From Klebsormidium nitens (lineage: Eukaryota; Plantae; Klebsormidiophyceae): DNA of 64,000 nucleotides. Every line of letters starts with the position of its first letter. Positions within the stretch are counted from its first letter, which is position 1. The notes below the pieces were generated by a model. It was not told where the DNA came from. It saw only the letters and a list, made by a program, of their open reading frames with translations, and searched no databases. Shown piece by piece: positions 1,129 through 45,000 of this stretch. The DNA is taken from NCBI GenBank assembly GCA_000708835.1, contig DF237398.1:1-64000 (forward strand), written 5' to 3'. Made by a program: the position numbers and the translations under genes.

Positions 1129-2433
1129 TCACGGGTCCGCTGCACAGAACGCCTTGCACCACTTGCGGACTGTAGCCTCTTCCCCAACAGCGCGCTTACG
1201 AGTTTCCGTGTCGTCCCAGTCAATCCAGGGCGCTTTGTGTGGAAGGATGCAACGAAGCACGGTCACGGAGCACAGGGCCCCGCAACGTTCCCTCCCCTCA
1301 CACCTTTCGTCATCGACAATGAGTATCTTTGATTCGGACGTCCTCATTTTCAAGCCGTGTTCACGAGCAAGGGCTAAGAAATGGCCCCGCCAGATCACTT
1401 CGCCTCGGCTGATTACAAGCTCTTTCAAGTCGGGACACTTTTCCGAGAACTCAGGAAGCTGCAGAATGGGCCTCACAGCTGCGGTGCAGCGGTCCGTAGA
1501 GTGCGGACTGGCGTGAAGGAAAAGCCTCTGCAGATTGGGGCAAGACTGCGCCACCTTCTCGAGCATGGAACCGGAAGAGCGGTGATCCCAAGCGTCGAGG
1601 CGCAGGGTCTGGAGATGCGCCAGGGGTGTGGAAAGAACGTCGAACGGTAATGCGGGCCTCGCTGATCCGGAATTCTCTACATTATACCTATCCTTGCCGC
1701 ACTGGAGCCTCAGACAGCGAAGATCGCGCAGGGAAGCTGGCAGGAAAGACGAAGCATGCGCCAGATCTTCGAAGTCGATGTCGGTAAAGTCCAGACTGGT
1801 AAGACTGTTTGGGTTCTCCATCAGGCGCTCGTAATCTTTTCCAGTGTGGGCCCAGCTCGGTCCTGGGAAGCATCGCTCTCCACGAAGGATCAGGCTCTCT
1901 AGCATCGGAAAGGCTTGCAAGAAGTACAGGATGTCGTAATGGTACCTCCAGCATCCGTCCAATGCAATCTCCAGTCTTCTCAGAGAGTCCCTCGACACCA
2001 AATGGAGCTTGACAAAACCGCTGATGCTTCCCTCCGAGATACTTGCCTCCATGCTGCTCCACCGAACGGCTGAAAGAGCTGGCCAAAGGCGCCCTTCGAC
2101 CTCGCTTCCCGTGACCAGTTTCGACAGGTTTGGTCGAAGTTTAGTCTCTTCCAACAAGGCTGCACTCACATCTGCTTCCGACTCATCATTGCCCCTAAAG
2201 CGAGGGTTAGGAATCACGAGAGTTGTTGTGCACCGCCATGCAGAGTCCCGGAAGGCTTTGTTGACTCGCACCAGATGCTTCAAGCTGATTGGATGCTTTT
2301 TGATGGCCTTCTGCAAGATGCAATCCAGAAGCTCCGGACAGAGCGCCTCAAAGCTGACGCCACCAAAGCTGTCGCTGGATTGGCCTTTCTGCAAGGGCCC
2401 TCCTGAGCGCATACGCGCATTTTTGCTCGCCAT
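1129..2433 (-). CDS. Intronless F-box / leucine-rich-repeat (FBXL/RNI-like) protein, 434 aa
   Basis: Uninterrupted 434-aa ORF. N-terminal F-box-like segment FEALCPELLDCILQKA...LKHLVRVNKAFR is followed by repeated LxxLxL units (FPMLESLILRG, NSLTSLDFTDI, LAHLQTLRLD, CPNLQRLFLH, CPDLKELVIS). Confidence 0.7.
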   Translation of the reverse strand: MASKNARMRSGGPLQKGQSSDSFGGVSFEALCPELLDCILQKAIKKHPISLKHLVRVNKAFRDSAWRCTTTLVIPNPRFRGNDESEADVSAALLEETKLRPNLSKLVTGSEVEGRLWPALSAVRWSSMEASISEGSISGFVKLHLVSRDSLRRLEIALDGCWRYHYDILYFLQAFPMLESLILRGERCFPGPSWAHTGKDYERLMENPNSLTSLDFTDIDFEDLAHASSFLPASLRDLRCLRLQCGKDRYNVENSGSARPALPFDVLSTPLAHLQTLRLDAWDHRSSGSMLEKVAQSCPNLQRLFLHASPHSTDRCTAAVRPILQLPEFSEKCPDLKELVISRGEVIWRGHFLALAREHGLKMRTSESKILIVDDERCEGRERCGALCSVTVLRCILPHKAPWIDWDDTETRKRAVGEEATVRKWCKAFCAADP

Positions 2434-3373: not shown

Positions 3374-6300
3374 TTACATGTATTCTAGAACGTGTCTAGG
3401 CATCTTAAGGATCTTCGGGAGGGCGTCCAGGTCTATCTTCCTCATGAAGAGGAAGCACGGGCGCAGGCGGCCGTTCCACAGGCACGGCATGGGACCGTAC
3501 TTGGTTAAGTCCTGCAGGGAACAAGTGACCTCATCGAGTCCTATGGAGTGTTTCTTGTTTTTCAATCTTGACGCCAGGGTTCCGTTCCGTTTGAAGCCAT
3601 CATCCGGAAAATATTGGGCGGCCCAAGCTGCGGCGTGCCGAAAAAAGAAACTTTCCCTCCCCTTCTTTTCTATCGTGAAAACCTCTACATCGGCTATGGG
3701 TAGAGACAAAAGCAGCTAACAGAACAAGAGAGGGTGTGTGAAGTTAAGATGGACACTACATTCGAGCTGTGCTTTGAAAACAAATCGTACGCGTCGACGA
3801 TGTTTAGTGAAATGTACGAAGATGGTGTAGGCGCCCCGCCCTGTGGACAGCCTTTAGGGCTGCTGATATGACCCACTCAAACCACTTCTAGCTAGGACCA
3901 TCTTCTTAACGAAGTACAGGTTTACAAGGCGTGCTGCCGCTAGTTCCCGTATACGGTATCCAGCTGGTGCGGGGCGCACCGGCTCACCGACTCTTTGAGA
4001 TTGAAAAGAGAACTCGGACTCTGAGCAAAGAGCATCAATCAACTTTGAACGTGGCTAGTTAAGACAACAGCTGGAACCTTATACGAACCTTTACGGTCTC
4101 GATTACGTCCGCCGTCAAGTGCTCCGAGTGAAAGAGGAATGGGTGCGCCGAGTGTGGGTACCACTTGACGAACGTGGTGCTCCGGTTGGCAATACCAGCA
4201 GGATCCAGCGCCTGTCACCAGTCAATGCATTTAAACGCAACTTAGATCTCCGGTTGGAGAGAGTTTTGAGAATCCCAACAAAGGGTGAGCTCCTCAAGGG
4301 ATTGTTGCTTTGAGGAGAAACACGGATGGGGCTACGTCAGCGAAAGTTTGATACAAGATTGAATCCACTACTCGTTGGTGCAGCATCTACGTCAGTCGAG
4401 CTTCAATCAGATACAAGGAGGCGCGTTTTAGGGCCTCGCGGTTAAGGAGACCTGAGAGACGGAATGCAACTTCCAAAGCTGGCAAGGATTTCATTAGAAT
4501 CCGAATTGGCTCCGCTGATTGGTATGCAGATTCACGGTCGGCGCAGTGCTTGTGTCTGGATCGTACAAGGGCCAGCAACTGCAGATCGGACGGCCGTCGA
4601 TGCCTTACGAGAACGAGGAGTAGAAAACATCCTAATGTGAGGTTCTAAGTGAACCGCGGCACTGAGATTCGGCTTTCAGGAGTATGTCGTACTCACGTTC
4701 ATGAGAGTCGGGAGGTAATGCTCGTCAGGGTAGCAGAAGTTGTGAGCAGGGTCGTTCTGTGCACCGAAACGAAGACACAGTTTGGAACAGAAAGCGCATT
4801 ATCCCGGTTATTGTAAGTAAGTCGGTTTTGGTTGTGATCCGCACTCTAGTAGTTGCTTTTCAGGAAGACTCATCGAAAAAGAGGGCGGCTCGATAAAGGG
4901 CGGAACAAATAGACGCTGGCATTCCGACAAGAAAGTCTCCAACCAGATGTTTCTCAACCTCACGAAATGAAGATGAAATTTTTTGACTCTCTTTTAATCT
5001 GCTATTTCGATGTTGGTGCAAGTACGCGCATGACACAGCGCTGACTCTAGACGCCCGAACAGACCGACGGAGAACAGAGCAAAGATTGGCTTGTTCGTGG
5101 ATTGCGACTCCCATCCATGTCACGTCCTCTGGAACCCAAGCAGAGTAAACAGACGATGCTTAAAAAAGTAAAAGAGGTGACTATGATGGTTGCACTTACC
5201 AGGCAGTGGTCCCGGAACTTTGGATAGTACTTTCTGTCCCGCACGACGATTGACGCGTGCCGTCGAGTGAGCGCGAACCACTGCACACGCACAGATGAAA
5301 ATGAATAGGTAAGGACAAGCGACGATGCGAATCCACTGTTACTCAGATCGAGGATCTGGAGTGATTGAGCGGCGAATCCAACTCTTAGCCTGGCGCGGGG
5401 AGCGCCTTAGGTAGCTACGGCATTGGTTTTCCCTTCTCTGCTTAGAAGAGCAACTTTTGCGCACCGTTCATATGGTTTTGGATATTCTAGCCACTAGAAG
5501 GAAGAGTATGATGAGCCCACCTGCGACCCTTTCCGCCACTCGCACGCGCTGACCTCCGGCGCCATCAACGGCTGGTAGCGCCCCAGTACGACCGGGCCGC
5601 CGTCGATGAAGCTGCAAACCAGCCAGGCAGTTTTCTTAGTCGGTACAAGCCTAACTGGCCGACAAAACAAGCCAGGTTCTTTGGAAGGCGCAGAAACTCC
5701 AAGAACAGCGCAGCTTTTTCTGAAGATACTACCTCAGAGCCGGGCGTCCGAGCACACCTGTCTAGCATACTGACTCCGGTCCCCATGAGGTACTCGTACG
5801 CGTACGGGAAGGTCCACACAGGTATGCACCTAAGAAAAGAGCAGGGTTGGGCGTCGGTATGCTCACTTTCGATCTACGTACCAAGATTCTGTGCTGAGAC
5901 AAGATGAGCAAAGAATCACCATTGGAAAATTACAGAAAGGATGATGGTGAAAGAGCCCAAGGCCGTCTCCTTGAATCAACGCAGATTGATATCTGGAACC
6001 TTGCCATCATGCGCTCTTGCAGTTCGGCCAAATGAGAGTGCAGGAGGGCCGGGAACGTACGTCTCTGATACGAGGACAAATCTTTCGTTGAGGGGGTCCC
6101 GCAGGGCGCGTGCAAGCAATCGCCTCTCTGCGTCGATTACGGTGATACCGCCCCAGAACACCTGACAGATTGGGGCCAATGAATGAGGGAGCCGCCTTTT
6201 GGCAGAAAAGACAACAATATCGTAGACTTGCTTTGAAATTGCCAGAGACACGTGCGTCTAACCGTGTCCTGCATTCTCCAGGTTTCGAAGAAAGTTCGTC

Positions 6301-7753
6301 GAGATCCGCTGCAAGATTTGGGCATGCTTTCTCACCAAAGGAGACTCGTGCAGTCACTGCAGGAGTCGGTCGTGCGGTTTTGATAAAAGTCAGACGAATC
6401 TCTTCAACATGCGTCTTGAGCCGTCTAAAATTGAATCCAACCTCTTGCAGCACACTTGACTTCATGATGTCAGAGGAATAGCAGAGACCGGACTCAGTAC
6501 AAGCGAAGCGCTTCCCCTTATCAGAGACTCCCTCTATTGTTGACCTCTTCCGCAAAGTGGAATATGCCCAGGTGACTTCGACTTGGGCAGGACACTCCTG
6601 TCTTCTTCTGATATTCACAAATTGAGCATTGATCGTTTTGCACCGCTGGCTTCAAAGTTAAGAGTTTGGTCATGCACAGAAGCGCTCAATTGTAACTTTG
6701 CTTTTCCCGTTCGAACTCTGAAGGTGGCCTCAATAAGGGAAAGGCCGGGTTTCAGTATCTGACCTCTTCACTTGGGATGCTGCGGCCCCGGAATACAGTG
6801 CTGTTGCTGGTTGTCTCGTTGAGGGTAAAGCCGGGACGGGAATGTACGTAGATAGAATACAACCATTCGTAACCCTGGAAGACACAAATACGAACTTCGT
6901 TCAGCTCACCATCCAATAAAACATTCTGAAACCCCATGAATTTGTCTTCTAGCTCGATAACACTTATATTGTCAAATATTGTGAAATACTGTGAAAGGTC
7001 ATGAACTCGGGAAGGGACTCTCGCGTGATTTGTGGCGGAATCTCTTGATAGGAAGGGTGCTGACTTTCAGATCAAACGTAAGCAACCTGTTCGTGTTTCT
7101 CACAAGGGAACTGAAAGACGATGTGCTCACCGTTTGAGATGCCAGACATTGTCATTCTGCTGACCAACTCGTCATCGAAGGTGCGCTCGCGCCTGATATA
7201 TACTTGTATCTCTGAGTCCATCCTACAATGTTCAATAACAACTGATGCAACTTTCAAAGCACAACAGCAGCACTTGTGGTACCTACCTCAAGAACGAAAG
7301 AAAAAGTAGAGCTGCATTTACAAGGATTTTTTTCTTGTTTCTTACGAGGCACTCAAGACGAAATCCTGAAATCGGAAGGAGAAGGACAAAACTCAAAGCT
7401 AAGGAGAACGGGAGTTCCTTCGAAACAATCTACAGGTTCACCTGGAAGAAGCGGTCCCAAACGCTTTCTAGCGGGATGGTGCCACGTGTCAGGAACATGA
7501 ACGCTATCTTCGGCGCTCTGGTTGGAGCCGCCGCCGGCATGGGGGCTCCCCCCGGTCCCTGCTCTGCCCCATGCAGCAGCATTTGGATGCGGTCATGACT
7601 TAACCCTTCGCCTACTCTCCACACGTCCGGCTTTCTATCCCACGGCAGGCTGCCAAACCTGAGTTCCGTGTTGACCATTAGGATGGTGACTAACGTGAAG
7701 ACAGCAATGCTTGCCGCACCTATAAAGGTCCACCTGTGGCTGGCAGGTGCCAT
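3374..7753 (-). CDS. Core-2/I-branching beta-1,6-GlcNAc-transferase family (DUF266/GT14-like, BC10-like) type II membrane glycosyltransferase, ~362 aa, 9 exons
   Basis: Frame-consistent GT-AG exons (minus strand): 7753-7442, 6874-6764, 6161-6061, 5829-5758, 5611-5521, 5280-5200, 4756-4697, 4211-4089, 3511-3374 (1089 nt). N-terminal TM helix, then family motifs KIAFMFLTRG, YSIYVH, DAERRLLARAL...NERFVLVSETCIP, WRKGSQWF, CYPDEHYLPT, ANRSTT...HP, CLWNG...CFLFMRK. Additional upstream (UTR or coding) exons cannot be excluded. Confidence 0.92.
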
Positions 7754-8764
7754 TTCTTCTCTTTCAGACAGTGTCTGGTTGGACACAGCGAAGCAGTTCC
7801 CTTAGCTGTCCGAACAATAATCCAGCACATGCACCTAAACTAAGAGCTCAAGCGATTGCGTTCCACGAGCTTCGTTACACGAATTCGAACCTCTGCGACG
7901 AGTGAGCAGCACGGTGCACCATGCGGTCAGTCCTTTCCTGCTGAAGTAAATCTTTTCTTCGAGGGCTTCGTCGGCCTTGACTTCGGAGGAGAATCCCTGC
8001 CAAACCTGATCTCGATGCAAAGATCGATGGCGGCCTTGGTCGAAGTGCGTATCTTCTCCCCTCGGCGGCAGCTTTCATGGCGAGTATGCCCTGCCAGCCT
8101 GCTCCAAGCAGGTCAAACGTTCCCCTTTGCAACAGAGTCTGCGATCTCTTGCAAGGCACACGAGGCTCCACAGAGACATATTTCATCCTTGCGAGTCTCA
8201 GCACCAGCTTCATGAGCTGGCGGACGTTCAACGCAGCATGCACTAGTGCATGCTCAAGGATCGAGAATGTAATGGGACAAGTCTACTTTTTGGTGGAGTG
8301 CGCTTTGTCAGCTTTGCTGGACGGCTTCACGGCTGACGATAGCTTCCTGTACCGCGCGGCTCCTCCTTAACAGAAGCTGACGTTCACATGTGCGCATGCC
8401 TTAGGCTGGTCAATGCCTGCTCCGATGTCATGTTGATGGAGAAACGATCCAGCTTCAAAGGAGCGAGAAGCTAAGATCAGTCTTTGCCACTTTGGTGAGT
8501 GCGAATTGTCTTGCGAACACGTCCCTTCGTGAGAGATGAGATACATCCGATCGTCAACTAGTTGCAACTTAGGCGGGCGGCGGCGCGGCCGGCCCACGCG
8601 GCGCCCGCGCTGCAGGCACTTGCGGCCGCGCGGCAACAGTTGAAGGACGTGCCACGCGAGTAAGCGCGCGCAGCTCAAATGTTGCAGAAAAGCAGGTGCA
8701 GACCTTCTCATTTGAATGCAATGCAGCAGCAAACTTTGCTGCAAAGCTTTGATGGACGGCGATC
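7754..8764. promoter_or_regulatory. Head-to-head intergenic region (candidate bidirectional promoter) between the glycosyltransferase and WASH1
   Basis: Divergent ATGs at 7753 (-) and 8765 (+). A very GC-rich patch at ~8570-8675 ends in a donor-like GTAAGC at 8660, a possible 5' UTR exon of WASH1. Confidence 0.45.
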
Positions 8765-11700
8765 ATGGCCGCCCAAGTTCACGAAGTGCCAGGTGAGCTC
8801 TGGCCGCGGACACCACGTGAGATCTTTTGTCATCCTGAACGAGCTGGGTAAACAGATATTTGATGGCGCTGCTGAGCTGGTTTTTGGACGCCTCCACAAT
8901 CTGATAAAGTCATGATAAAGTCTGATGTGGAGGGGGTGGTGGCAGTCACTCAGTTTAAGGCTGGGGGTGTAGCACTAGGAGTTCTTGGCCTCTTCTGTGT
9001 TAGCCAATGATGTATTGTTCGCTCTGGACATGTGCTCCCCCCTCCTTGCGTTCAGTAAATGTTCAGTCCATCTGTGCTGAGTGTTCATAATTGATTGATA
9101 GACAGACTGGAGCAGATGGTGGTACATAGAAGTCCTGCTTCCAAGTACACATCGTAACAGACCGCCCAACGTCGAATCAAGTACAAGTGGTCCGATAGGA
9201 GGGCTAATGCAGGAAGTAAATCAAAGCGATAGATGTTTGTCTTTTCTGGTGGTGGTGCGATGGTGAATGGTTCGGGCCATCATATTTGCGTCACCACCAG
9301 AAGGGGAACTCTTAAATCTGCTTTACCGACAGAATGAAAGCCCGGTCTCTAGAATGAATTTCAAGGATGTGAATCCAACTTATTGACCATGACCTAACGT
9401 TTCGCTGCTAAGAATGACCCAACGGTCTTCAATTTGAATCAAATGAGACTGACCATAAGAGCATTCTCAAAACGGCCTCCACATACATATGCAGCCTGCT
9501 TCTTTCACGTTTAAGCTGCAGTCTATCTGCTTGCGCAGTGGTGGCCCATGGCCTGAGGCCCGCAGAAACATATGCGCAGCTGTGCCAGGCGCTGCAAGCA
9601 TTACAGTCTACTGCAACAGCCGTCTTCGATCTGGTGGAGAGCAGAGTAGGCACTTCTTAGCTTTGTCTCCCCCACAGAGACCTTGGTTGGAGGTCTCATG
9701 TTAAAGTAAGCCCAATCCATGGATCCAAGACTTGGGGGAGAAATTGATGGTGGTGTTCTTGCATAAGCCCGTTGATGCTAGCCTCAGAACATTGAGTTTG
9801 ACGATTATATAGTGGTGCAACAGATAGCATTCACGGTGAAATGCCAGGTAGGTTTGTCGCAATTTTCCATCATTTCAAACAAGGGAACTTTGTCCCAATG
9901 GTTGCGGTGTCAGCTTCTACGTGAGATTCTGCGAAGCTTCATGCCTCTTCATCACGGGTTTTCTCATATAACTAGCAGGTTGGCTTCTTTTGTCTTCTCG
10001 GAGCTGGGGCCCTTATCAATCACGGGCAATTGCAGGTGGAGTCAGAGCGGGGCCGTCTGCGTGCGATAAGCAGTCGGATCAGGTCTGCGGAGGTAAGGTA
10101 CTCCCTTTCTAAGCCTGCGGCCAAAACAACCAAGTAGTGTGTTGCGGAGGCGGAGAAAATCAGAGTCCCACCTGGTTAATCCTGTGGCAAGATGTTCAGT
10201 GCCCATGGAAGCAGAGGATTCTCAGGAAGAAGCCAGCTTTTCCTAGGACTGAAAAATTGCTAACCCGTCCTGAAGGCAGACGCAGGCAGACCATTCACAA
10301 TATGATAAATTGTTGGAAATGGCAGACCCAGAAGTGAAGGGCGATATGTGGTTTGACGACCGTTTGGCCCTTACAGGCAAAGATTGCATCCCTGACCGGT
10401 TCCACCAAGGCCATCACGATCTATTCAAGCGCCAAGTATCCAGCACAGCACAACATCGACTATGAGCCAGTTTTCGGTATTCGGACTGCTCGCACTGATG
10501 GCCCTCAGCAAGCAATTCCTAGCGCTATCCCATTCAGGGGCGACCGGCAGGTAGGCCGAGCTATCTCAGTCAGGCGTCAGCTTTGACTCCTTTCTAGAAG
10601 AGCACCGACGCCGCTCTTTATTTCAGTTACCATTCCTTTCCACTCTTGATACTTCCTCCCATGCCCAGGTATTTGTGACTCGAATGTGTCGCTTTCAATT
10701 AGATCGAGCTGGCTCTTCCTTGGTTCAAGTCTTCTTCTGTCAAGGAAGCCCTCCCAGTATCCATGCCCGAATTGCCGAGGAAGCCTTACTCACAAGTCTG
10801 TCAGGTTCTCGGGGATGCACTCTGTTGGTACTCAAGCAGGACAAGTGCTGTCCTTGTCATTGACAAAAACGTATTTCGTGACGCCACTTGTCCATGCACT
10901 GAAAGTGACTTTGCTTGCTGGACCAGGCCCGTCCGCAGGGCACTGAGGAGGCGCTGGAGCTCTTCCGCTTTTTCTCAGCAGCCGCCAACCAAGCACCAAT
11001 CAAAGACGAAAAGGTGAGTGTGCAAGCCTCATCCTCGAAACGCGGATACAGTACAATCTCAGAGCTTACTAGATGTCCTGGTTCGGTTACATATCGCATA
11101 TTCATCGAGTGTACGCTTTCGCGCTGGAAGAGCAATCATTGTAGAAGGTGCAGCCAATGGATCCCAGTACTTGCAACATTTAACGTCGCGTTCCAAGAGC
11201 TTTTTGCCGCCCGAAATCGCACCTTCTGTCGTCAAAACGTTTGGATGTTAATCAGCAGATTCTTGGGGTTGCTCACTCAAGGGTCCTTCTTTTGATAAGT
11301 TTTTGAAACAGTAATGATGATTGAAGTGTAGCTTCAAACTAACCCGTCCCGTCCGAGGGGGTGGTCTTGATATTTTGCGCTTGTGAGAATGGGATGATCA
11401 GTACGTTCAGTTTCTTTCGCAGACCGAACGCCCTAGAATCCCGGCAGACCTCCGGTCCACGGCCAACCTCCTCCTGTTTGACACCACCGAAAGTATCTTG
11501 GATAGGTGAGCGCACTTCGAGACCCCACTTCCCGGGCCCTGGGTGCTGTAACGGAGCTTCGAGCATGCCTGAGCATTTTGGGATACGCCTTCACGTCTTG
11601 GATCGCAGTATAAAAATCAGGGGACCTCGTCTCGTGAGGTGCAGAAGCTCGCTGGGCAGCCTCATGTGATTGGAGAAGCGGATGACAGACCTAATTTGCC

Positions 11701-14700
11701 CCCACCACGTTTTCGCCAGGCCCGCTGCTCCTCAGAGTGGACGGTCTCAGCAGGCCTCTCCGCTTCGGGGACAGAAGCCAAAGGAGCCAAAGCCGAAGGC
11801 GTCCCCCAGCAAACCGCCTCGGACCATCATCCAGGGGGATGTGCTGGTCAGTTACCTTATATTCGGCGCCCCACCTCGTTGGTTGCCAAAGATCGCCGAA
11901 ATCTTTCCCATTCAAACCTCCGCTCAGGACCATTCTCCTCGTACACCGTGTGCGGATTCTTGCAATATCTGATCCATACCCATCTATTCCGGCTGAGGAT
12001 GGATCAAGTTGTTCCTCCTCACCCCTCCCCCCCGCAGGCTGTCGACGATTTGGAGCAGTTCGCCTTCCGCCCAACCCTGGAGGCGGTCCCGGCGCTCGAC
12101 TTGCCTTCCGTGCTGCCTGACCTGCCGATGATCGCTGACATCAGCTGGACGGGTAAGCGGGCGGCTGCTGACGTCATCGTGACTCTGCCTTTATTGAAGG
12201 GATTCCAAATCGCATCACGCCTGTTGCGGTCGTGCTGCCTGATTGAAAAGGAGCTGACTTTTTAATCTGCTTGTGTAATGGTGAAATTCATTCCTCCGAG
12301 TCTGATTTCATGTGTTTTCGGATTGTGTTTTTCAGGCGGTGCGGAGGACGAAGATGGCGCCGGGTCCCTTGCAAGCGAACGAAATGCTGGTAAGCGTGGC
12401 ATTTTAATGAGTTGTGCGCACACTTCCGGAATTGGTGCGCTTGTGGGGCGTCGGAGGCTCTAGTCGGTGCGGTTTTGAGTCAAGTCCTCGTCAGCTATAA
12501 GAATCGCAAGGTATACCTGCTCTTCACGATTCGTCACCAACAAATGGCACGGGTAAGGCTGGTAGACAATGCATACCAATATCGGGATGCGAAATTTCAA
12601 GGCACAGAGATAGGCATCGACGCTTCACGCCACGCGTCCTTGAGAATACTAATTCGACGTAGATACACATCGTTCTTCTTGTTTGGAGTGTATCTGCAAC
12701 CCTCTTTGCGTAGGATCGGTGCAAGTGAATCATGTTGGCCTGTGCTAGTATCATAGCCAGTTGAGCCTTGGATCTTGCTCCCGTCGTTCTCATCTGTTGC
12801 CGGTTTGCACAGGTTCTGAACCACCGCCCTCCTCCGCCCCCTCCCCACCTCCCTCCACAAGCGACCGCGCCACTCCTCCCAACCCTCACCCTCCTGTACA
12901 AACTCCACACTCTGACGTCAGCCCGACGTCAGCCTCGTCGTCCTCCAGTGAGCGCACCCGGCCAACCCCTTCCCCGGCGGCGCCGCCCCTGCCCAACGAC
13001 CCCCCTTCCGTTGCCGCTGCCTCTAGTCCACCCCCGGGCGCAACAACGGAAACGACAGGCCGGGCTCCAGGACTCGGTAGAGATGCCGCGTCCGGTAGTC
13101 AGAGGTCTCTGTCGCCGCCTCCCGCGCCACCCCCGCCGCCCCCGCCGCCGCCGAAAGGGGAACCCTCGCCCCCAGTTCCAGCCATCGGTAAGCGGACTGT
13201 GTAAATCTTTCGTCTCCCGTCAGGGAAGCACCAAGTATGTGCACGTACTCTCACGCCGAGGTTCCATGCTTTTTCCATGCGGACAAGTACTTCTGTTCTG
13301 GTTCTTGGGGTGGCGCTGTGAATTTAAATTTTGTAGATTTTCGAGCGTGAATATTATCGTTAAGTCACTCCTATTTTTGCTGTGCGCCTTTGGCAGCTGG
13401 CGATTCCGCCCGACAAGCGCTGCTGGCGTCCATCCGGAGCCCCGGCGTCCGGTTACGGAAGGTGAGACTGTCCCTGGCAGGCAGCCACGTCCAAGTTACT
13501 GTGAAGATCCTGATCTAATCTTACACCCTTCCGTGAGGCGCTTCCCAACACTCACGCCGTTCAAAGGGAAAGACTAGATACCGAGCCTCATGATCGTAAT
13601 CAAGCCGCTCTTTCAGTTGTGGTCAGTCACCGGCAATTACGGACGAATTGAGAAGGCCGGCAATCTTTGTACAGGTTTCCGACGACCGATCCCGTACACC
13701 CAGCCCCCGCAGGGAGATGATGGCCGCACTGAAAGTGAGCTCCTGTGTCCCTGTTTCGCGCCATATTGGTGCCGACCGAAGAACAGCACAGCCGGTTTCG
13801 GTACTAGCAGAAGTAGGCCGGTAACCTGGGGGATTAGAAACTAAAGTAGACTGCCAAGGTGTTTAAAGTGGACATGCGGCCAACGTTCGATCCCTCACGT
13901 GCACGAGTTGGCGCACGAGTCACTCTCGGCAGATATGAGGGGCTTGGGCCCCGTTCTCAATTCTCGTGACTTAGACCTCGAAGAGGTCGGTTGCATCCTA
14001 GAAGCAGCTGCTCTCTACCGCTATATCTAGCGCTGTAGTTCTAAAGAGGCTCTTAAAAGAATCGGGCATGCTTAAGTCAATTCGTGAGTCCCGGCGATCG
14101 TTGCAGGATGCACCTGGAAGTGAAGGAGCAGGCACTCGAGGGCGTAGCGCGAGCTCGCCGCCTCCGATGGTAAGCCCTCGCCAATTAGGTTCCTTGTTTC
14201 TCAGGCAGATTTCGACCATCACGCATAATAATCTGGGCAGCAGACGCAGGTCGGACTGGCCGTTACAAGTTTTAACTTCAGTCAGACTTGGATCAGAAGA
14301 CTGTTGGCACACGCAGTTTGCATTGGCGATTGCATTGATCGAGCAGTGGTGCATAGCTGACGTCAGAGCGTTTCGAAACTGCACTGAAACCACGTGGGCT
14401 GCGTGCAGGGGGATATGTTTGCGGAGATGGCCAGCCACTTGATGAGCCGGCGGCTGTCCATGAAGGGCGGCCTGCAAAGCGCTGGTAAAGAGGTGAGAGG
14501 TCGCCCGATCTTGATACGCTATGTGCAGATAAGAGGCCCGAAAGAGGAGAACGCAAGCTGGTCACAGTGCGAGACTGATCAGGGGTTGCACAGGGCGTGC
14601 GAAAGGGTTCGGAGATCCAGAGTGAACGATCTGGAGGTGTTCTGATGAGTGCCATAGCCTGGACGCAATTGAAATCGTTATGTTTGGAGCTCGTTTGACT

Positions 14701-15539
14701 TGATTGTAAAGCCGTCGAGCTGAATCTGCCAACGGGATACGCGATCGTGAACCCAGTAAAGGTCTCGCCTTCTTCGAACTTGAGTGCCCATGGAAAGTTT
14801 CTTGACCCCTTTCTGCTTCATGATAAAGCTTACTTACTTCGCTGCAGGTGGAGAGAGGTGCAACGGAGACAGCCGTTCGATTTGCGAGTCCGCCTCGCCA
14901 TGTGGAACCCTCACCGTGAGTTGTAGCGTGATCTTTGCTCGTGTGTCGTCCCTTCGACGGCAGAAAATGTAAGGTGGTTCTCTTTATCGACGGGGTGACA
15001 TGGTGGGACAACAATCTTCCACGTACATCGCTCCAGAAAAAGCAAACTCAAGATGCACGGGTGAAGTGTACAGAAGGGCGGCTAGATTTGCTCATGGAAT
15101 ACTGTTGACTGAAGTTGTTTGTCCTCCGCTGTGATCGAAGTTCACTTTGAGTACAATCAAATTCCAAACCCCAAGCATCAAACATCAAGCTTTGTGTGAA
15201 TTCTTTTGAACTTTGACGTCCCTTTGTGCAGGCAACCGCTACCTGTGAAGGTAAGGACTTGCGGAATCGCACATGGTCTGCGATGTTGGTGTGCTCGATT
15301 CCCGCCTTGTTGTCTTGGCATTGGCATTTTCATAGTTCTCGAGTGTGCATCGAAAGTGGTCGGTTCTGCACATCGACCCTCTTAAGCCTCACAAGACGAA
15401 TGCTTGAACGGCAAAATGGGATTGTGAATTTGTAGTTTCTCTTTTCTTGCAGACCCCAGCTCTTGCGGCGCTCGTCGCTCAAAGGAGTACGAGAAAGTCT
15501 ATAGAGAGCGACGAAGAAGATGATGAATGGGACGACTGA
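8765..15539 (+). CDS. WASH1: WASH complex subunit 1 (WASH1/WASHC1), Arp2/3 nucleation-promoting factor, ~570 aa, 18 exons
   Basis: Exons: 8765-8792, 9539-9645, 10036-10092, 10377-10550, 10745-10804 (least certain), 10927-11013, 11423-11505, 11720-11846, 12038-12152, 12336-12389, 12813-13187, 13397-13461, 13675-13734, 14107-14169, 14409-14492, 14848-14915, 15232-15250, 15453-15539 (1713 nt, frame-consistent). WAHD motifs: [88 protein letters not shown]. These are followed by a poly-Pro region, WH2 RQALLASIRSPGVRLRK, central helix GDMFAEMASHLMSRRLSM and acidic tail ESDEEDDEWDD*. Confidence 0.9.
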
Positions 15540-16383
15540 AAACTGCGGTTTCATACAGATCATTGCGCAAGCTACCAGTTTAGGGCTACTTGGCTCCATA
15601 ACTCTTATGTATATATGTCGAACCACATCGTAAAGTCTTCATTGCCATTGGTAGGCAACGTAGCTGATGATATACAGACTACAACGGTGGTACCAAGTGT
15701 TTGCCAATGCTTCAATGATGCAAACTGGTGACTTTGTTGAATGGACAAGGCGTGCTTGAGTAATCACATTTGCAGCGAGCACCATGCTGCTTGAACATGC
15801 TGCAGTAAATGCATAAGTTGGTTTCCTCCAGTAATGATTGCGCACATGTACATGACACGTGAGAAGGATGCAGGCGGTACCTCAAACGGCTTAATCCCAA
15901 CCGCTTTTCGATTTGCACCGGTCCCGAACCACCTCGAACCGGCTGCAATGGAGGGGGGATTTTCCCATATTGCGCCCGGCTTAAGAAAGCGGGGCAAATT
16001 GTTGAACTGGCTCCTCCCGGTAGCCCATACGACTTGGTATCTGCAAGAGCAACAGCAAGATCCCTCTGTCAGAGGCGGTGCAAAGAAAATATCAGGGAAA
16101 GCGGATCAGGTGAAGAGGGCGCCTCTGGCAGGCAGCAGCTCTGGGCTTGTCAGAGCTGAGGACATTGCTTTGCGCTCCTAGAAAGACAGGTTTTCCAGTG
16201 TACGCATCGTTGCGCTGAGGAGCTTTGATTGAAGATTTTAGATTGGTGCAGGCTGTTCCAATCCAGATCCGCCAGCTGACAGATCGAAAGCTGTTTCGGA
16301 TCAGATCTGTGTAGCTTTGGAAGCTCAGAGAGAGCCGGTGGCAGATCAGGGAAGATTTTCATCTTGAGAGAGGAGGTGCGGCC

Positions 16384-19300
16384 ATGGGGGGCGACAACAC
16401 CCCTCTGTCAAACACCCTGGCCTCGGTCCTGGACAACCTTTCGACCACTAGCTCTGGTACGCTGTTTGGTATTGTGGCTGCCACGGGCATTGTTGCTGCC
16501 ACTGGTTTTGCGCTCACATTCGGGCAGGCAGAGGTTAAAGGGAAGGCTGCAACTGAGCTTTTGAAGGGGACGTCCCTAAGGGAAGATGAGGTGAAGGAGC
16601 ACTGGGAGGAGTACGACAAGTATTTCCAGCAGAATGCAGGCGAGGGTGTGGACGAGAAGCAGAAGGCGCCAAAGCTGGTTGATACCTTCTACAACCTTGT
16701 GACAGGTAGGTAATTGTTCGTGTTTACCGTCCTGTTGATGTGCAAAGAGCGAATTAGGATGGATCTGAGTTTCAGATAGCATAGGCATACCAGTTTTGAT
16801 TGTTTTTGAGATCTGATGTGGAGAGGAGGCAATGGCTGGTGCAAGTCTGCGAGTATTACACACAATCTCTAAGATTGCTCCGCTTGGTTGGCATCAGCAT
16901 GGCAATGCTCTTCCGTCTGCCAGCTATGTTAGAAGGCGCTTGCATTTGTCATGATGCAAGTCTTAGTCAGTCAAGAAGTCTGGCGTTGATTGGTGGTTGG
17001 CCTGGCTCATTGCTTTTGGAGCAAAGACGGCCTTGTGGTCTGGAAAATTAGAAGGCAAGTGACTCTGTCTGGATAAGTAGACAGACACTGATCCTACTCA
17101 AGTCCTGCATCTGACAGATATTTACGAGTGGGGCTGGGGCCAGAGCTTCCACTTCTCTCCAGCCATTCCGGGGAAGAGCCATAAAGATGCCACTCGTGCT
17201 CATGAGACCATGATTGCTGATCTGCTGGAGCTCAAGCCAGGCCAGAAGGTGTTGGATGTTGGGTGCGGGGTGGGAGGTCCGATGCGTGCCGTTGCATCCT
17301 ACTCTCAGGCGCACGTCACAGGGATCACAATCAATGACTATCAGGTGAATACAGTGCGCCAAGGACACGCCTTCTGATGCCAAACTCTGCGGGTTGCTTT
17401 GCGTGGGTTCTGGTTGGCCTAAAATCATGTCAAGGCACTTCTGAGAGGTAGTATCTATGCAATGTGTTGCTTCTGCCCGGACCTTTTGTTCGGGCCTTAA
17501 TTGCAATCAAGATGAGCCCTGCGGTACCTTTCAATCATTTGGTTGAGCTGGGGCCCCACTTTTTCAACAGAACCCTAATGCACTTCGCTTCACTGGTGGA
17601 TGGTCTCAGATCTGAGGCACTAAACTGTCTTGCACTTAGAGGACATTGTTCCGGACCATCAATTGCGACCTAGGAATTTTTGAACAGGCGATTGCTGGCT
17701 GGTAGTCTTGCTGCTACATTCTGTATTCAAAGAGGCCCCTTTTCACCATGTTCAACAGTAGCCACAACCTTCCTGAATCTACCTTGTCACCGTTGGCAGC
17801 ATCAACCAATTGGATCGATCCTGACACGCTGGAGCACAATTGGGTGGTTGCTTGTCACCTGGTAAAATAATGCACCTTCTGGGAGGGTGTTCGATGTCAC
17901 CTGGAAACGCAGTGCACTTCAACCAGCTTTTCCGCTTTCTTGCGTTGCAAGCAGGGACCAAGGAGTATTTCTGCCGGCCAGGGGGTCTACGACCTGCCCC
18001 CTGGAGAACTGTGGCCAAGCAATCCCAGTGGCGCGGCCCCTCAAATCAAGTCCTGTGTGCATTGGCCAAGCTTTCGATTGCTAGAATCAGGCCAACCGTC
18101 AATTGCCAACTGACTGCAGGTTAAGCGGGCGCTGCACCACAACGAAAAGGCGGGGCTCAAGGACCTGTGCACAGTGGTTCAGGGGAATTTCCTGCACATG
18201 CCGTTCGAGAAGGAGAGCTTTGACGCCGCCTATTCGTGCGAGGCCACCTGCCACGCCCCAAAGCTGACCGACGTGTACAAGGAGATCTTCGGGTAAGGTG
18301 CCAGGAGTGAATCAGGCAGCTCATTGTTGTTCAAGCTCCAGCATGTGGCTGGTCACAATTTGATTATTTTGATTCCTGGAATCTGAGGTGTTGAGATTGG
18401 CTCTCATATGGTCCTAGCAACAGCGCTCGGCTTATCTTGATGTAAGCAGCAAAACTGCGATTCGGTTACCCATCACTGGCCCGCTGTACATATCATAAAC
18501 TGCTCGAGCTTGGACTCAGTGTTGAGGCATAATGTACAGGCCTCGAAGATGGTTATGGCTGTTGGTCCCAAGCATGTCACTGAGATTGGTAACCAGGCAC
18601 ACATGGCTTCTCTGAAACCACACTTGACAGTATTGTTTCTCCAGAGTCACCCGAAGTTATTGTTTGATCCATACTCAGTATAAAGTCTGTGGACTCTGTC
18701 CGGTGACCCTTTGGCCAATCAATGACCAGCTTGTCCTCGCAAAATCTGTGTCTATTACTCATCAAAGACTCCCAGCCTGACCAAGGTTTCAGTCCGCTTC
18801 CTTAACCAGACCCCCTCATGGTGGCGCTCGCTAGCTTTACAAAAGCTATCCATCTTATGTACTCCTAAAGCTCATCTGCTCCTGCAAATCTTCCCCTGTT
18901 ACACAGGATACTAAAGGTTGGAACGCTGTTCTTGTCACAGGCTTCGATGGGAGCGCTGACGTCCTTTTTCGACACCAATCTATGTTCTTTTGTTCCGATG
19001 CTGATGTCCCCGTTCCAAGTTGTGCTCCTGCAAGACGCGGAATAAGTGGGAGTATACTTCTTCAAGACTCTTTCCTCTCAATGGCGCTCTTCTTTGCTCG
19101 TGCTGACGTTATCTTTCCCCCTGCAGGATGCTCAAGCCTGGTGGCCTCTACGTCTCATACGAGTGGGTCAAGACCCCCAAGTACGACAAGCTGAACCCCG
19201 AGCACGTGCGCATCGTGGACGCGATCTGCTACGGCGACGCGCTTCCCGAGATGCGCACGTACCTGGAGATCGTGGATGCTGCGAAGGAGGTCGGCTTCGA

Positions 19301-20079
19301 GGTGGTGGAAGAGAGGGACCTTGCCCTGCCCCCCGCGGGGCCGTGGTGGAAGCGGCTCAAGATGGGGCGCCTCGCATACTACAGGTGCGGACGACAGTAG
19401 GGCCGCCGCTGGAGCTGCTGTTGCTGAGTTTTGAGCGGAAATGTTTTTGTGAAAGTCGGCCCTCGGCAGACTTCGCTGTCTAGAAGCTTCTGGGCTTGTT
19501 TTGGTATATATCTGCTGAAGACACTGCGGCTGCATAGGGGGAATGGTGTTGGATGTCTCCCTCTGGACTCCACTTCCCTTCCACATGGTTACTTGTCTGC
19601 TCGGGCTGATGGGGCTTGTATCGAAACCTGCCTGTCGTAGATTCGATTGCAAAGTCGAGACTGCTCCAGGAATTGGTAGGTACGGTCGTTGTGGCAGTCT
19701 GAATCATAAGACTGCCATTCGAAAGCAACAGTCTAGGGTCTGTCCGGTACTTGAGAGCATCCAGACAATGCGCTCTTCTCCTTTCCTTAGAAACCCTTGG
19801 ACTTTAGATTATCTTTCACGTGTGACTGAGCAGAGAGTCTCTTTCCTCTATATCTCCGGCTGACTCGACCGTACGTCGTGCAGGAACCACGTGATTGTGA
19901 GCATACTGTCCTTCCTTGGGCTGGCTCCCGCCGGCACGACCGAGGTCCATGAGATGCTCTACAAGACGGCAATCTCCCTGGTGGAGGGAGGCGAGACAGG
20001 GGTCTTCACCCCCATGCACCTATTGCTTTGCCGGAAGCCGGAGACACAAGAAACACCGGCGGTGGCTGCCTCGGCATAG
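16384..20079 (+). CDS. SMT2: SAM-dependent sterol C24-methyltransferase, SMT2-type (24-methylenesterol C-methyltransferase-like), 391 aa, 5 exons
   Basis: Exons 16384-16705, 17118-17344, 18120-18292, 19127-19384, 19884-20079 (1176 nt). Motifs [51 protein letters not shown]. SMT2-diagnostic features are an N-terminal hydrophobic anchor plus KGKAA, PWWKRLKMGRLAY.RNH and GGETGVFTPMH...CRKPE. Confidence 0.93.
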
Positions 20080-42000: not shown

Positions 42001-45000
42001 CCAAGGTGAGGCCTCTGCGAGGTTTTGCCCTCAGGCTCACATGAAGTTCGTTTTAGAAAGCAGAGAACTAGAAGAGGCGGGGTTTCACTTCTCCAGTGTA
42101 ATTTCAATAGCGGTTCGTTTCGATTGAGCTGCAGCTGATCCATGGTGCCAGAAAAATTCGAAAGTCTCGAAACTCTAGCCTCCACAAATTCTCTCGTGGA
42201 ACAATATTTACCTCTTCGAAACCAATCGACCCCACCGTGAACCCTGACCTTCAGATTCTGGTCAAGACGTTCACTTTCATCCTGGGTATCCAGCCAGCAC
42301 TAGCTGTGTTCAATGCCACTTCTTGTAGGTTTCATCTGATTCCGCCATTGCGCCCACCTTAGAAGCTTCATAATTTCTACTAACCGCTTCCCAAACCCCC
42401 GTTGTCCAGATCTTGGCCAAGAAGATGATTGCGATCATGGAGCTGAGCCAGCAGCAGCTGTCGAAGCAGGACCACTACGACTACGGCCTGCGCTCCTTCG
42501 TCATCCCCATCAGCCGCGCCGCGGGCGCCATGAAGCGGACGGACCCGGACGCGTCCGAAGAGGTGAGAGCGTCCGAACTCAGGACACTTTCCAGGGTGTA
42601 TTTTGCCACGATTTCAGAATTCTGGGGTCTTGGGTCAGAAAGCTATAGAAGGCCTTTCTGATTGCGCGGCTGACTTCCTTGTCGTTGCTAAAGGATCCTA
42701 ACGAGCTTGTGAGAGAAAAGAGACTGAAGTGCGTTTAAGGAGGGTGATCTTTACCGGAGCAGCGAAACCGTGCTATGTGGATATGATGGTAATGCAATGT
42801 GAAAGGAAACAGAATCACTAAAACAAAGGTAGATGCCACCCTAAGAACCGTTACTGGAAGGGGGCGGAAGCGGAAAGCCCTAGACGCGCGTGTCAGCGGT
42901 GTAACTTTTCAAAACGGAAAAGTCAACTTTGTTTTCAGTCGCTTTCAATGAGCGCTCTATTTGCCGCCCCCAGGTGATCATGTACCGCACGATGAAGGAC
43001 CTGATCATGCCCAAGCTGGTGTACACCGACCTGCCGCTCTTCATGAGCTTGCTTTCCGACCTGTTCCCGGGGGTCGAGATCGCCGCTGTGGACGGGGGGG
43101 CACTCCGGAGAGCGCTCGAGGAAGAGCTGCTCGCCGCGGGGCTGCAGGTCGTGCCTGCGTTCGTCACCAAAATCATTCAGGTGCGTCAGCAGAGCTGTTT
43201 GATACCGGACCTCCACATAGGACCATATGCAGGAATAATCGGATCGATGCATAGGGGCGATGATTTGAAGGTCAGAAAAGACTGTAGTGCTTTTTTGACA
43301 GTGGATTCACCGGTCGGAAACTGGTTCTCTGAAGAAGGAAGCCCCCGAACTGCAATGCTGACCAAAACTTGCCTCCAGGGGATAAATTGGTTCCCATAAT
43401 AAATGTTCAGCGTAGCTTTCTATGTCTCTGAGTAGCTCTCACTTATGCGTAAGTAGCGTCTTGGGTTCTCTACTCTGGCTTCGAACAGTATACTCGCCTA
43501 TACATTGCAGTTTTCGGGTTCCATGATTTCGATTTCCCTGCTCGTTGAATACTTCCCTGTAGAAGAAGAGTTGATGGAACAAGTGATCGAAGAATTCCCC
43601 TGAGAGACTACTCTCAGCAAGGAATCTACGTACGTGCCAGCTGCTCACTCTTACCGGCGACCTCCTTTTCCAGATCTACGACTGCAAGGTCGCCCGCCAC
43701 GGCAACATGATCGTGGGCAAGACCGGCTCCGGCAAGTCGGAGGCCTGGAAGTGCCTCACGCGCGCGATGGCGCGCCTCAAAAAAGAAGGCCTCGAAGACT
43801 TCGAGCGCGTCCACGTATACCCCATAAACCCGCTCGCGCTCAGCAACAACGAGCTGTACGGGGCCTTTGACGAGGCGACGCACGAGTGGACGGACGGAAT
43901 CCTCGCGCGCATCATGCGCGAGGTGTGCAAGGACGAGAGCTCGGACCAGAAGTGGATCCTGTTCGACGGGCCGGTGGATACGCTATGGATCGAGAGCATG
44001 AATACGCTGCTGGACGACAACAAGCTGCTGACGCTGCTGAGCGGGGAGCGCATATCCATGCCGGCGCAGGTGGGCAGTCTTTGGAGTTTTAACATTAGGT
44101 CTGGAACAGTCTTGCAGCTCGTTATACTTCCAATGACCCCTGAAGTTCAGGTTTCGTGCGACTTAGTGAAACTTCGTCATCACGCTGGGCAGCTCCAGCG
44201 TTTTGAGATCCCCCAACGACGTACTGTTTCAAGGTTTTACGTCCTGAATTGGGCGGATCCCAGTGTTTCCGCTTCAAACTCCAGTTTCAGATGCAGGGCT
44301 TGGAGAAAACATACAGGGCTTCGCTTTACTAGGATCCAGGACTACGAGAGAATCACGCGGCTTTCTCATCCATGAAATGCTCCAAACTGCTTCTGCACAA
44401 ACACGTCACTTTCCGTCTCGTTGAGCCTTTCCCGATAATTCAACTGCTGACCAACCCATTTGTCACCCGACGCATTCCTCTGGGCAGGTATCCATTCTGT
44501 TCGAGGTGGAGGACTTGTCTCAGGCATCCCCGGCCACAGTCTCCCGGGCGGGCATGATCTACCTCAACGTGGAGGACCTCGGCTGGTGGCCCTACGTGAC
44601 GTCATGGCTCCAGAAGAAGCAGGCCGCCGGCGCGGACCAGGTTCTAGTGGACACGCTCAAGGTGCGCGCGCGCTTACGTTACAAGTTTGGAACCGATTCT
44701 TGTCGAAGCGGATCAGAAACTGTCTATGACCGCGTAGGCAGCTCAAAAAAGCAGTATTAGAAAGCAAGCTTTGTCGGATACTCAAACGTTGCAGCAACGA
44801 AGTTCTCCTTCAAGCGCCCTGAAGTAGGGTGATGGATTCTTATAAGTCGCCTGCGGATGCCGCGATACCGTTGCCACTGAAGCCCACACTTGCTCTCTGA
44901 TGTGCGCGCCTAACCCCTCTGCTAACCACCTCCCTAATCCTCTTCTCACAGCGCATGATGGAGAAGTACGTCGAGGCCACGTCCGAGTTCCGCCGCCGCG

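What the first reader, a model, noticed from the sequence alone, without database searches (positions are those of the whole stretch)
8765..15539. Complete WASH1 (endosomal Arp2/3 activator) in a plant-lineage genome
Seen: an 18-exon gene encoding the full WASH architecture. It has the WAHD N-terminus ([22 protein letters not shown], cf. human [36 protein letters not shown], cf. VPSYLPDLPGIA), poly-Pro, WH2, central amphipathic helix and an acidic tail with the conserved Trp (DEEDDEWDD*). Established: WASH drives Arp2/3 actin on endosomes with retromer/retriever in animals and amoebae, while Arabidopsis relies on SCAR/WAVE as its WASP-family activator. Inference: this alga, identified as Viridiplantae by the flanking DUF266 and SMT2-type genes, retains an ancestral WASH-Arp2/3 endosomal actin system that was later lost or reduced in flowering plants. 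The ORF track misses it because the exons are short. Whether this orthologue is already catalogued could not be checked.
Basis: partly seen in the sequence, partly recalled or inferred. Interest (0 to 1): 0.75.

Follow-up and report, generated by a model that had tools for sequence, protein, structure and literature searches.

The report
WASH actin regulator gene in Klebsormidium
This is an intact, transcribed gene for WASH, the protein that switches on actin branching at endosomes, in a Klebsormidium-type green alga. It is a sound annotation but an ordinary one, because WASH was reported over a decade ago in green algae, mosses, lycophytes and conifers, along with its loss in flowering plants.

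Summary
Window 8765-15539 (+) carries a 17-exon gene, not 18. Every intron is GT-AG, and the 1653-nt reading frame encodes 550 aa.

- **Transcription:** Spliced contigs from four runs in four studies reproduce every junction from exon 2 to exon 17 without a mismatch, including a 19-nt microexon.
- **Family:** Pfam WASH_WAHD matches exons 2, 4 and 8 in collinear order. Exon 4 alone scores 33.7 bits against a cut-off of 24.2. WH2 matches exon 11. A proline-rich linker, a central helix and a ...DEEDDEWDD end complete the WASH layout. No SCAR/WAVE or formin family matched.
- **Novelty:** WASH is published for Ostreococcus, Physcomitrella, Selaginella, Picea and Cycas, with loss in eudicots (PMC3298513, PMC3689024). 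WASH-complex subunits are published for Mesostigma and prasinophytes (PMC8245530).

I could not test for the partner subunits in this genome. One side observation: intron 15 is often retained, which would remove the acidic tail. Interest is low.

The parts
8765..8792 (+). Exon 1: start codon in the context GATCATGG, aa 1-10
   Evidence: GT donor follows and the frame joins exon 2. Exon 2 has no in-frame ATG. This junction was not covered by the laid reads.
9539..9645 (+). Exon 2: first helix of the WAHD domain, aa 10-45
   Evidence: WASH_WAHD model positions 11-43, 13.3 bits; joint 9645->10036 present in 4 runs.
10036..10092 (+). Exon 3: WAHD helix continued, aa 46-64
   Evidence: joints on both sides present in 4 runs.
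10377..10550 (+). Exon 4: WAHD core with the ...[12 protein letters not shown] motif, aa 65-122
   Evidence: WASH_WAHD model positions 63-97, 33.7 bits, E 3.4e-8, above the 24.2 cut-off..
10927..11013 (+). Exon 5, aa 123-151
11423..11505 (+). Exon 6, carrying the NLLLFDTTE motif, aa 152-179
   Evidence: That this resembles the human LLLFNTTE motif is from my memory, not tested.
11720..11846 (+). Exon 7: basic, Pro/Lys-rich stretch, aa 179-221
12038..12152 (+). Exon 8: distal WAHD motif [12 protein letters not shown], aa 222-260
   Evidence: WASH_WAHD model positions 220-248, 21.9 bits, E 1.4e-4..
12336..12389 (+). Exon 9: acidic linker, aa 260-278
12813..13187 (+). Exon 10: proline-rich region, aa 278-403, including a run of nine Pro at 13115-13156
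   Evidence: 42 Pro and 27 Ser in the 147 aa of residues 269-415..
13397..13461 (+). Exon 11: WH2 (V) motif ...ALLASIRSPGVRLRK; its last residue, V, is the first codon of exon 12
   Evidence: Pfam WH2 17.5 bits, E 0.0033, on the 21-aa exon piece (cut-off 23.1)..
13675..13734 (+). Exon 12: end of WH2 and linker, aa 425-444
14107..14169 (+). Exon 13: linker, aa 445-465
14409..14492 (+). Exon 14: central (C) amphipathic helix GDMFAEMASHLMSRRLSMKG, aa 466-493
   Evidence: Read directly from the sequence. No Pfam model covers this element..
14848..14915 (+). Exon 15, aa 494-516
14916..15231 (+). Intron 15, retained in part of the transcripts. Read-through stops one codon into the intron, at aa 516, removing the acidic tail.
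   Evidence: retaining contigs in all 4 runs, at depth 11/68/6/17; translation of the retained form.
15232..15250 (+). Exon 16: 19-nt microexon, aa 516-522
   Evidence: table 5c: the letters found between the two sides of joint 14916->15451 match this exon in X1, X8 and X17. Loose ends in X2 agree.
15453..15539 (+). Exon 17: acidic (A) tail ending ...SDEEDDEWDD, then the stop

Best explanation
This is the single-copy-type WASH (WASHC1) orthologue of a Klebsormidium-type streptophyte alga. It is an intact, expressed gene of 17 exons encoding a 550-aa Arp2/3 nucleation-promoting factor. Shown here: the gene model, its transcription and splicing, the WAHD domain, and the order WAHD - conserved motifs - poly-Pro - WH2 - central helix - acidic Trp tail. 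Inferred from what is established for animal and Dictyostelium WASH: the N-terminal WAHD helices hold the protein in a pentameric regulatory complex with strumpellin, SWIP, CCDC53 and FAM21, which docks on endosomes. The WH2 motif then delivers an actin monomer, and the C helix and the acidic Trp tail bind and activate Arp2/3. The result is small branched-actin patches that help sort and pinch off recycling carriers.
For:: 17 exons, all introns GT-AG, open 1653-nt frame; spliced contigs from 4 runs in 4 studies confirm all junctions from exon 2 to exon 17 with 0 mismatches, so the gene is transcribed and processed. WASH_WAHD hits on exons 2, 4 and 8 in model order (positions 11-43, 63-97, 220-248; 13.3 + 33.7 + 21.9 bits); WH2 hit on exon 11; no hit to a SCAR/WAVE, WASP or formin family at E <= 1; proline-rich linker with a P9 run; LRKV-type WH2; central helix with the RR pair; tail DEEDDEWDD with Trp three residues from the end. 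Literature: WASH with this layout is documented in Ostreococcus, Physcomitrella, Selaginella and Picea (PMC3298513). WASH-complex subunits are documented in the streptophyte alga Mesostigma (PMC8245530). The GO term 'WASH complex' is enriched among gene families shared by charophytes and land plants (PMC6566377).
Against: There is no functional or localisation data for any plant-lineage WASH. I could not check whether strumpellin, SWIP, CCDC53, FAM21, retromer or Arp2/3 genes exist in this genome; Yanagisawa et al. (PMC3689024) say that in 2013 only Ostreococcus lucimarinus was reported to have all five subunits. The WH2 hit is below Pfam's cut-off when scored on the exon fragment alone. The exon 1/2 junction is not confirmed by reads. 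Part of the mRNA retains intron 15 and would encode a protein without the Arp2/3-binding tail.
Confidence: 0.85

Rival explanations
1. It is a true WASH orthologue, but in this walled alga it is used for something other than retromer-linked endosomal sorting. Possibilities include cell-plate or cleavage membrane traffic, zoospore formation, or a leftover of ancestral phagocytosis machinery. It may work without the full five-subunit complex.
For: PMC8245530 treats WASH-complex genes as a hallmark of phagocytosis in green algae. PMC6566377 links the GO term to phragmoplast-related functions. PMC3689024 notes that most plant species had not been reported to hold all five subunits.
Against: The WAHD helices that bind the regulatory complex are the best-conserved part of the protein, which argues that the complex is kept. 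In every organism studied, WASH acts on endolysosomal membranes.
Confidence: 0.1
2. It is a decaying or functionless remnant, like the WASH fragments reported in grasses.
For: Kollmar et al. found only N-terminal WASH fragments in Sorghum and Oryza. Here, intron 15 retention yields a truncated reading frame.
Against: All 17 exons are open. All domains, including the very C-terminal Trp, are intact. Every splice site is canonical. The spliced mRNA is assembled in runs from at least four studies.
Confidence: 0.03
3. The contig is not from the alga but from a contaminating protist or animal that has WASH.
Against: An ORF 6 kb upstream belongs to a tiny family whose only named member is KFL_003660100 of Klebsormidium nitens. 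Twenty runs from 8 studies under two organism labels hold the stretch; the four I laid, three under one label and one under the other, hold it at 100% identity. GC content and intron style are uniform over the 64 kb. Earlier scan notes on other pieces of this genome name K. nitens.
Confidence: 0.02

Closest known systems
WASH / WASHC1 of animals and Dictyostelium (WASP-family Arp2/3 activator of the endosomal WASH regulatory complex)
   Same: The domain order is the same: N-terminal WAHD (Pfam PF11945), conserved mid-region motifs, proline-rich stretch, one WH2, a central helix and an acidic tail with a penultimate-region Trp. Overall size is similar (550 aa).
   Different: The Pro/Ser-rich linker is longer (about 147 aa). 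About 55 residues separate the central helix from the acidic tail. There is no experimental evidence for complex formation, endosomal location or Arp2/3 activation in this lineage.
Plant-lineage WASH homologues described by Kollmar et al. 2012 (Ostreococcus, Physcomitrella patens, Selaginella moellendorffii, Picea glauca)
   Same: Same family, same green lineage, and a regular C-terminal acidic domain as reported for the moss and lycophyte proteins. This gene fills the expected position between chlorophytes and land plants.
   Different: Klebsormidium was not sequenced when that survey was made, so this species is not in it. I did not obtain those sequences, so no alignment or tree was made.
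SCAR/WAVE, the WASP-family activator that land plants rely on
   Same: Proline-rich region plus a C-terminal VCA module. It is regulated inside an analogous five-subunit complex.
   Different: The N-terminus here matches WAHD, not the SCAR/WAVE homology domain, and no SCAR/WAVE family appeared in the Pfam scan.

Membership tests
WASH (WASHC1) family | N-terminal WASH homology domain (WAHD, Pfam PF11945) | tested here: met
   collinear hits on exons 2, 4 and 8 (model positions 11-43, 63-97, 220-248). Exon 4 alone scores 33.7 bits against a cut-off of 24.2. No competing family matched.
WASH (WASHC1) family | Short conserved motifs between the WAHD and the proline-rich region, shared by all WASH proteins (Kollmar 2012, Fig. 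5) | tested here: inconclusive
   [12 protein letters not shown] lies inside the Pfam alignment of exon 8. NLLLFDTTE is present, but I matched it to the human motif only from memory. The paper's sequence logos are not held as text.
WASH (WASHC1) family | Proline-rich region before the VCA | tested here: met
   residues 269-415 hold 42 Pro of 147 residues, including a P9 run.
WASH (WASHC1) family | C-terminal VCA: one WH2, a central amphipathic helix, and an acidic tail with Trp | tested here: met
   Pfam WH2 at E 0.0033 and 17.5 bits on a 21-aa exon piece, which is below the 23.1 cut-off because the motif is split by an intron. The sequence shows LLASIRSPGVRLRKV, MFAEMASHLMSRRL and DEEDDEWDD at the end.
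WASH (WASHC1) family | Orthology shown by phylogeny within the WASP superfamily | not tested
   No full-length homologue could be fetched. The spliced protein has no reference, exon-sized queries cannot reach full-length proteins in the word search, and the exhaustive search was left unused.
WASH regulatory complex (SHRC) | Co-occurrence and assembly with strumpellin, SWIP, CCDC53 and FAM21 | not testable with these tools
   Only this 64-kb window can be read. The scan's notes hold none of these words.
Arp2/3 nucleation-promoting factors | The VCA stimulates Arp2/3-dependent actin assembly | not testable with these tools
   This needs a pyrene-actin assay with the purified C-terminal fragment.

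The most novel reading that the evidence does not exclude
Intron 15, which lies next to a 19-nt microexon, is retained far more often than any other intron of the gene, and in one data set at more than half the depth of the main transcript. The retained mRNA encodes a WASH that keeps the WAHD, WH2 and central helix but lacks the acidic Trp tail. If this mRNA is translated and the retention is regulated, the alga would make a natural isoform uncoupled from Arp2/3 that could occupy the WASH complex and damp endosomal actin assembly.
Probability: 0.07. Interest if true: 0.45.

Novelty: already known. Interest (0 to 1): 0.17.

Why it matters
It confirms that a streptophyte alga close to the land-plant stem keeps a complete, expressed WASH gene. 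This fits the published picture that WASH was present in the ancestor of green plants and was lost only later, in flowering plants. Its practical value is modest: a corrected, RNA-supported gene model, including a 19-nt microexon that automatic predictors tend to miss, in a culturable alga where WASH function in a walled, plant-like cell could be studied. It does not change what is known about the distribution of WASP-family proteins.

Tried and rejected
- **PDB sequence search with exon 4:** no match at E <= 1.
- **ESM Atlas feature search with exon 4:** no usable hit; a 58-aa exon is too short for it.
- **Scan notes:** a word search for WASH-complex, retromer and Arp2/3 terms met none of them, and no notes exist near this window.
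- **Finding the public record of this contig:** I tried two exact products of the neighbouring 434-aa ORF; neither is on record.
- **Papers not held:** Veltman & Insall 2010 and Derivery & Gautreau 2010. Their content is cited only through PMC3689024 and PMC3298513.
- **Bock et al. 2021:** Supplementary Table 2 has no column for Klebsormidium, although the species is in their data set.
- **Literature searches:** Klebsormidium plus 'Arp2/3 complex' found nothing.
- **Full protein searches:** I did not type the spliced 550-aa protein into any tool, as the rules require. Pfam was therefore run exon by exon, and no full-length homologue, alignment, tree or fold was produced.
- **Readings rejected:** SCAR/WAVE or formin identity (no such Pfam hit), pseudogene (open frame, spliced mRNA) and contamination (plus identical RNA contigs from four studies).

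Full report
**What is in the sequence**

Reading 8500-15800, I anchored exon ends on GT-AG sites that keep one frame open. This gave a 17-exon model from the ATG at 8765 to the stop ending at 15539.

- The CDS is 1653 nt and the protein 550 aa.
- The 16 introns are 183-746 nt long, and every one is GT..AG.
- The start codon sits in a good context (GATCATGG).
- Exon 2 has no in-frame ATG, so an upstream exon is required.

**Transcription**

Twenty public runs from eight studies hold 9-42% of the sampled words of the 7-kb stretch. The upper shares are what a spliced mRNA of a gene that is about one quarter exon would give.

I laid contigs of four runs from four studies on 9540-15539, the 6000-letter limit.

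- All four runs carry contigs that skip introns 2 to 14 exactly as predicted, each with GT..AG ends and no differing letter.
- The last joint (14916 to 15451) carries intervening letters that match the 19-nt microexon 15232-15250. Loose ends in X2 show the same exon 16/17 junction.
- These runs are therefore RNA, and the gene is expressed and processed as modelled.
- The exon 1/2 junction lay outside the laid stretch. In X17 the main contig extends 65 letters upstream of 9540. That fits 1 nt of exon 2, 28 nt of exon 1 and 36 nt of leader, but it does not prove the junction.

**Identity**

The spliced protein has no reference, so I scanned Pfam exon by exon.

| Exon | Pfam family | Model positions | Bits | Note |
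|---|---|---|---|---|
| 2 | WASH_WAHD (PF11945) | 11-43 | 13.3 | |
| 4 | WASH_WAHD | 63-97 | 33.7 | E 3.4e-8; above the 24.2 cut-off on its own |
| 8 | WASH_WAHD | 220-248 | 21.9 | |
| 11 | WH2 | | 17.5 | E 0.0033; the motif's last residue is in exon 12 |

The three WAHD hits are in the same order along the gene as along the model. Nothing from SCAR/WAVE, WASP or formin families appeared at E <= 1.

The rest is read directly from the sequence:
- a Pro/Ser-rich linker with 42 Pro in 147 residues, including a run of nine;
- the WH2 motif LLASIRSPGVRLRKV;
- a central helix, MFAEMASHLMSRRL;
- the acidic end SDEEDDEWDD.

This is the layout that Kollmar et al. give as general for WASH proteins: WAHD, conserved motifs, poly-Pro, VCA (PMC3298513).

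**Host organism**

The window is eukaryotic, with about 52% GC throughout. The neighbours are:
- a Branch/DUF266 glycosyltransferase on the minus strand at about 6.0-7.8 kb;
- a sterol C-methyltransferase on the plus strand at about 16.3-20.1 kb (Sterol_MT_C, 78.6 bits);
- a dynein heavy chain gene reaching 61.4 kb.

Better evidence comes from a 434-aa ORF 6 kb upstream. It has only seven relatives among 5.8 billion proteins, and the only named one is KFL_003660100 of Klebsormidium nitens. Earlier notes of this scan on other pieces of the genome also name K. nitens. The RNA contigs are identical to the window under two organism labels. That would fit the old and new names of one laboratory strain, but this is my inference.

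I take the host to be K. nitens or a very close relative, a streptophyte alga.

**What is already known**

- Kollmar et al. 2012 (PMC3298513) found WASH in Ostreococcus, Physcomitrella, Selaginella, Picea and Cycas. They found only fragments in Sorghum and Oryza and loss in eudicots, and concluded that the last eukaryotic common ancestor had WASP, WAVE and WASH.
- Yanagisawa et al. 2013 (PMC3689024) repeat this for plant biologists. They note that only Ostreococcus lucimarinus had been reported to hold all five complex subunits.
- Bock et al. 2021 (PMC8245530) report WASH-complex proteins in Mesostigma viride, Chloropicon and Crustomastix. Their table has columns for many prasinophytes.
- Fitzek et al. 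2019 (PMC6566377) found the GO term 'WASH complex' enriched among gene families shared by charophytes and land plants, in a data set that includes Klebsormidium.

A WASH gene in Klebsormidium is therefore what the published distribution predicts. I found no paper that discusses this particular orthologue. I also could not check whether the public annotation of the genome holds it.

**Mechanism**

Shown here: gene structure, expression and domain content.

Inferred from animal and Dictyostelium work:
- the WAHD helices integrate the protein into the pentameric regulatory complex on endosomes;
- the WH2 motif brings an actin monomer;
- the central helix and acidic Trp tail activate Arp2/3;
- the resulting branched-actin patches support cargo sorting and carrier scission.

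Whether the partner subunits, retromer and Arp2/3 exist in this genome could not be tested here, because only the window is readable and the scan's notes hold none of the terms.

**Side observation**

Intron 15 (14916-15231), just upstream of the microexon, is retained in contigs of all four runs.

| Run | Depth, intron 15 retained | Depth, spliced joint |
|---|---|---|
| X1 | 11 | 63 |
| X2 | 68 | none assembled |
| X8 | 6 | 15 |
| X17 | 17 | 47 |

Contigs lying in other introns have depths of 2-7. Contig depths are crude.

Read-through meets a stop one codon into the intron, at residue 516. The product would keep WH2 and the central helix but lose the acidic tail. Slow splicing next to a microexon, followed by nonsense-mediated decay, is the plain explanation. 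A regulated tail-less isoform is possible but unsupported.

**Verdict**

The evolutionary inference is the established one. This is a good annotation of a known kind of gene in a lineage where it is expected, so interest is low.

Noticed in passing
window 14916-15250: Intron 15 of the WASH gene, next to a 19-nt microexon, is retained much more often than the other introns. In run X2 the retaining contig has depth 68 against 115 for the main contig. Retention puts a stop one codon into the intron, at residue 516, and would delete the acidic Arp2/3-binding tail.
   Followed up: partly
window 1129-2433 (-): A 434-aa single-exon ORF with faint LRR-like Pfam hints. It has only seven relatives in the 5.8-billion-protein search; the only named one is KFL_003660100 of Klebsormidium nitens, at 44% identity over 37% of the query. 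The ORF itself is not on record as a called gene, so it may be an unannotated lineage-specific gene.
   Followed up: partly
window about 43700-61420 (+), probably starting further upstream: A very large multi-exon dynein heavy chain gene: AAA_5, AAA_7 and lid, AAA_lid_11, and Dynein_C at 324 bits. I did not determine whether it is axonemal or cytoplasmic. Either would be worth noting in an alga whose vegetative cells are non-motile.
   Followed up: no
window 5979-7801 (-) and 16315-20076 (+): The WASH gene lies head-to-head with a Branch/DUF266 glycosyltransferase gene. It is followed on the same strand by a sterol C-24 methyltransferase gene (Sterol_MT_C, 78.6 bits). I did not determine whether that gene is the SMT1 or SMT2 type.
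   Followed up: partly
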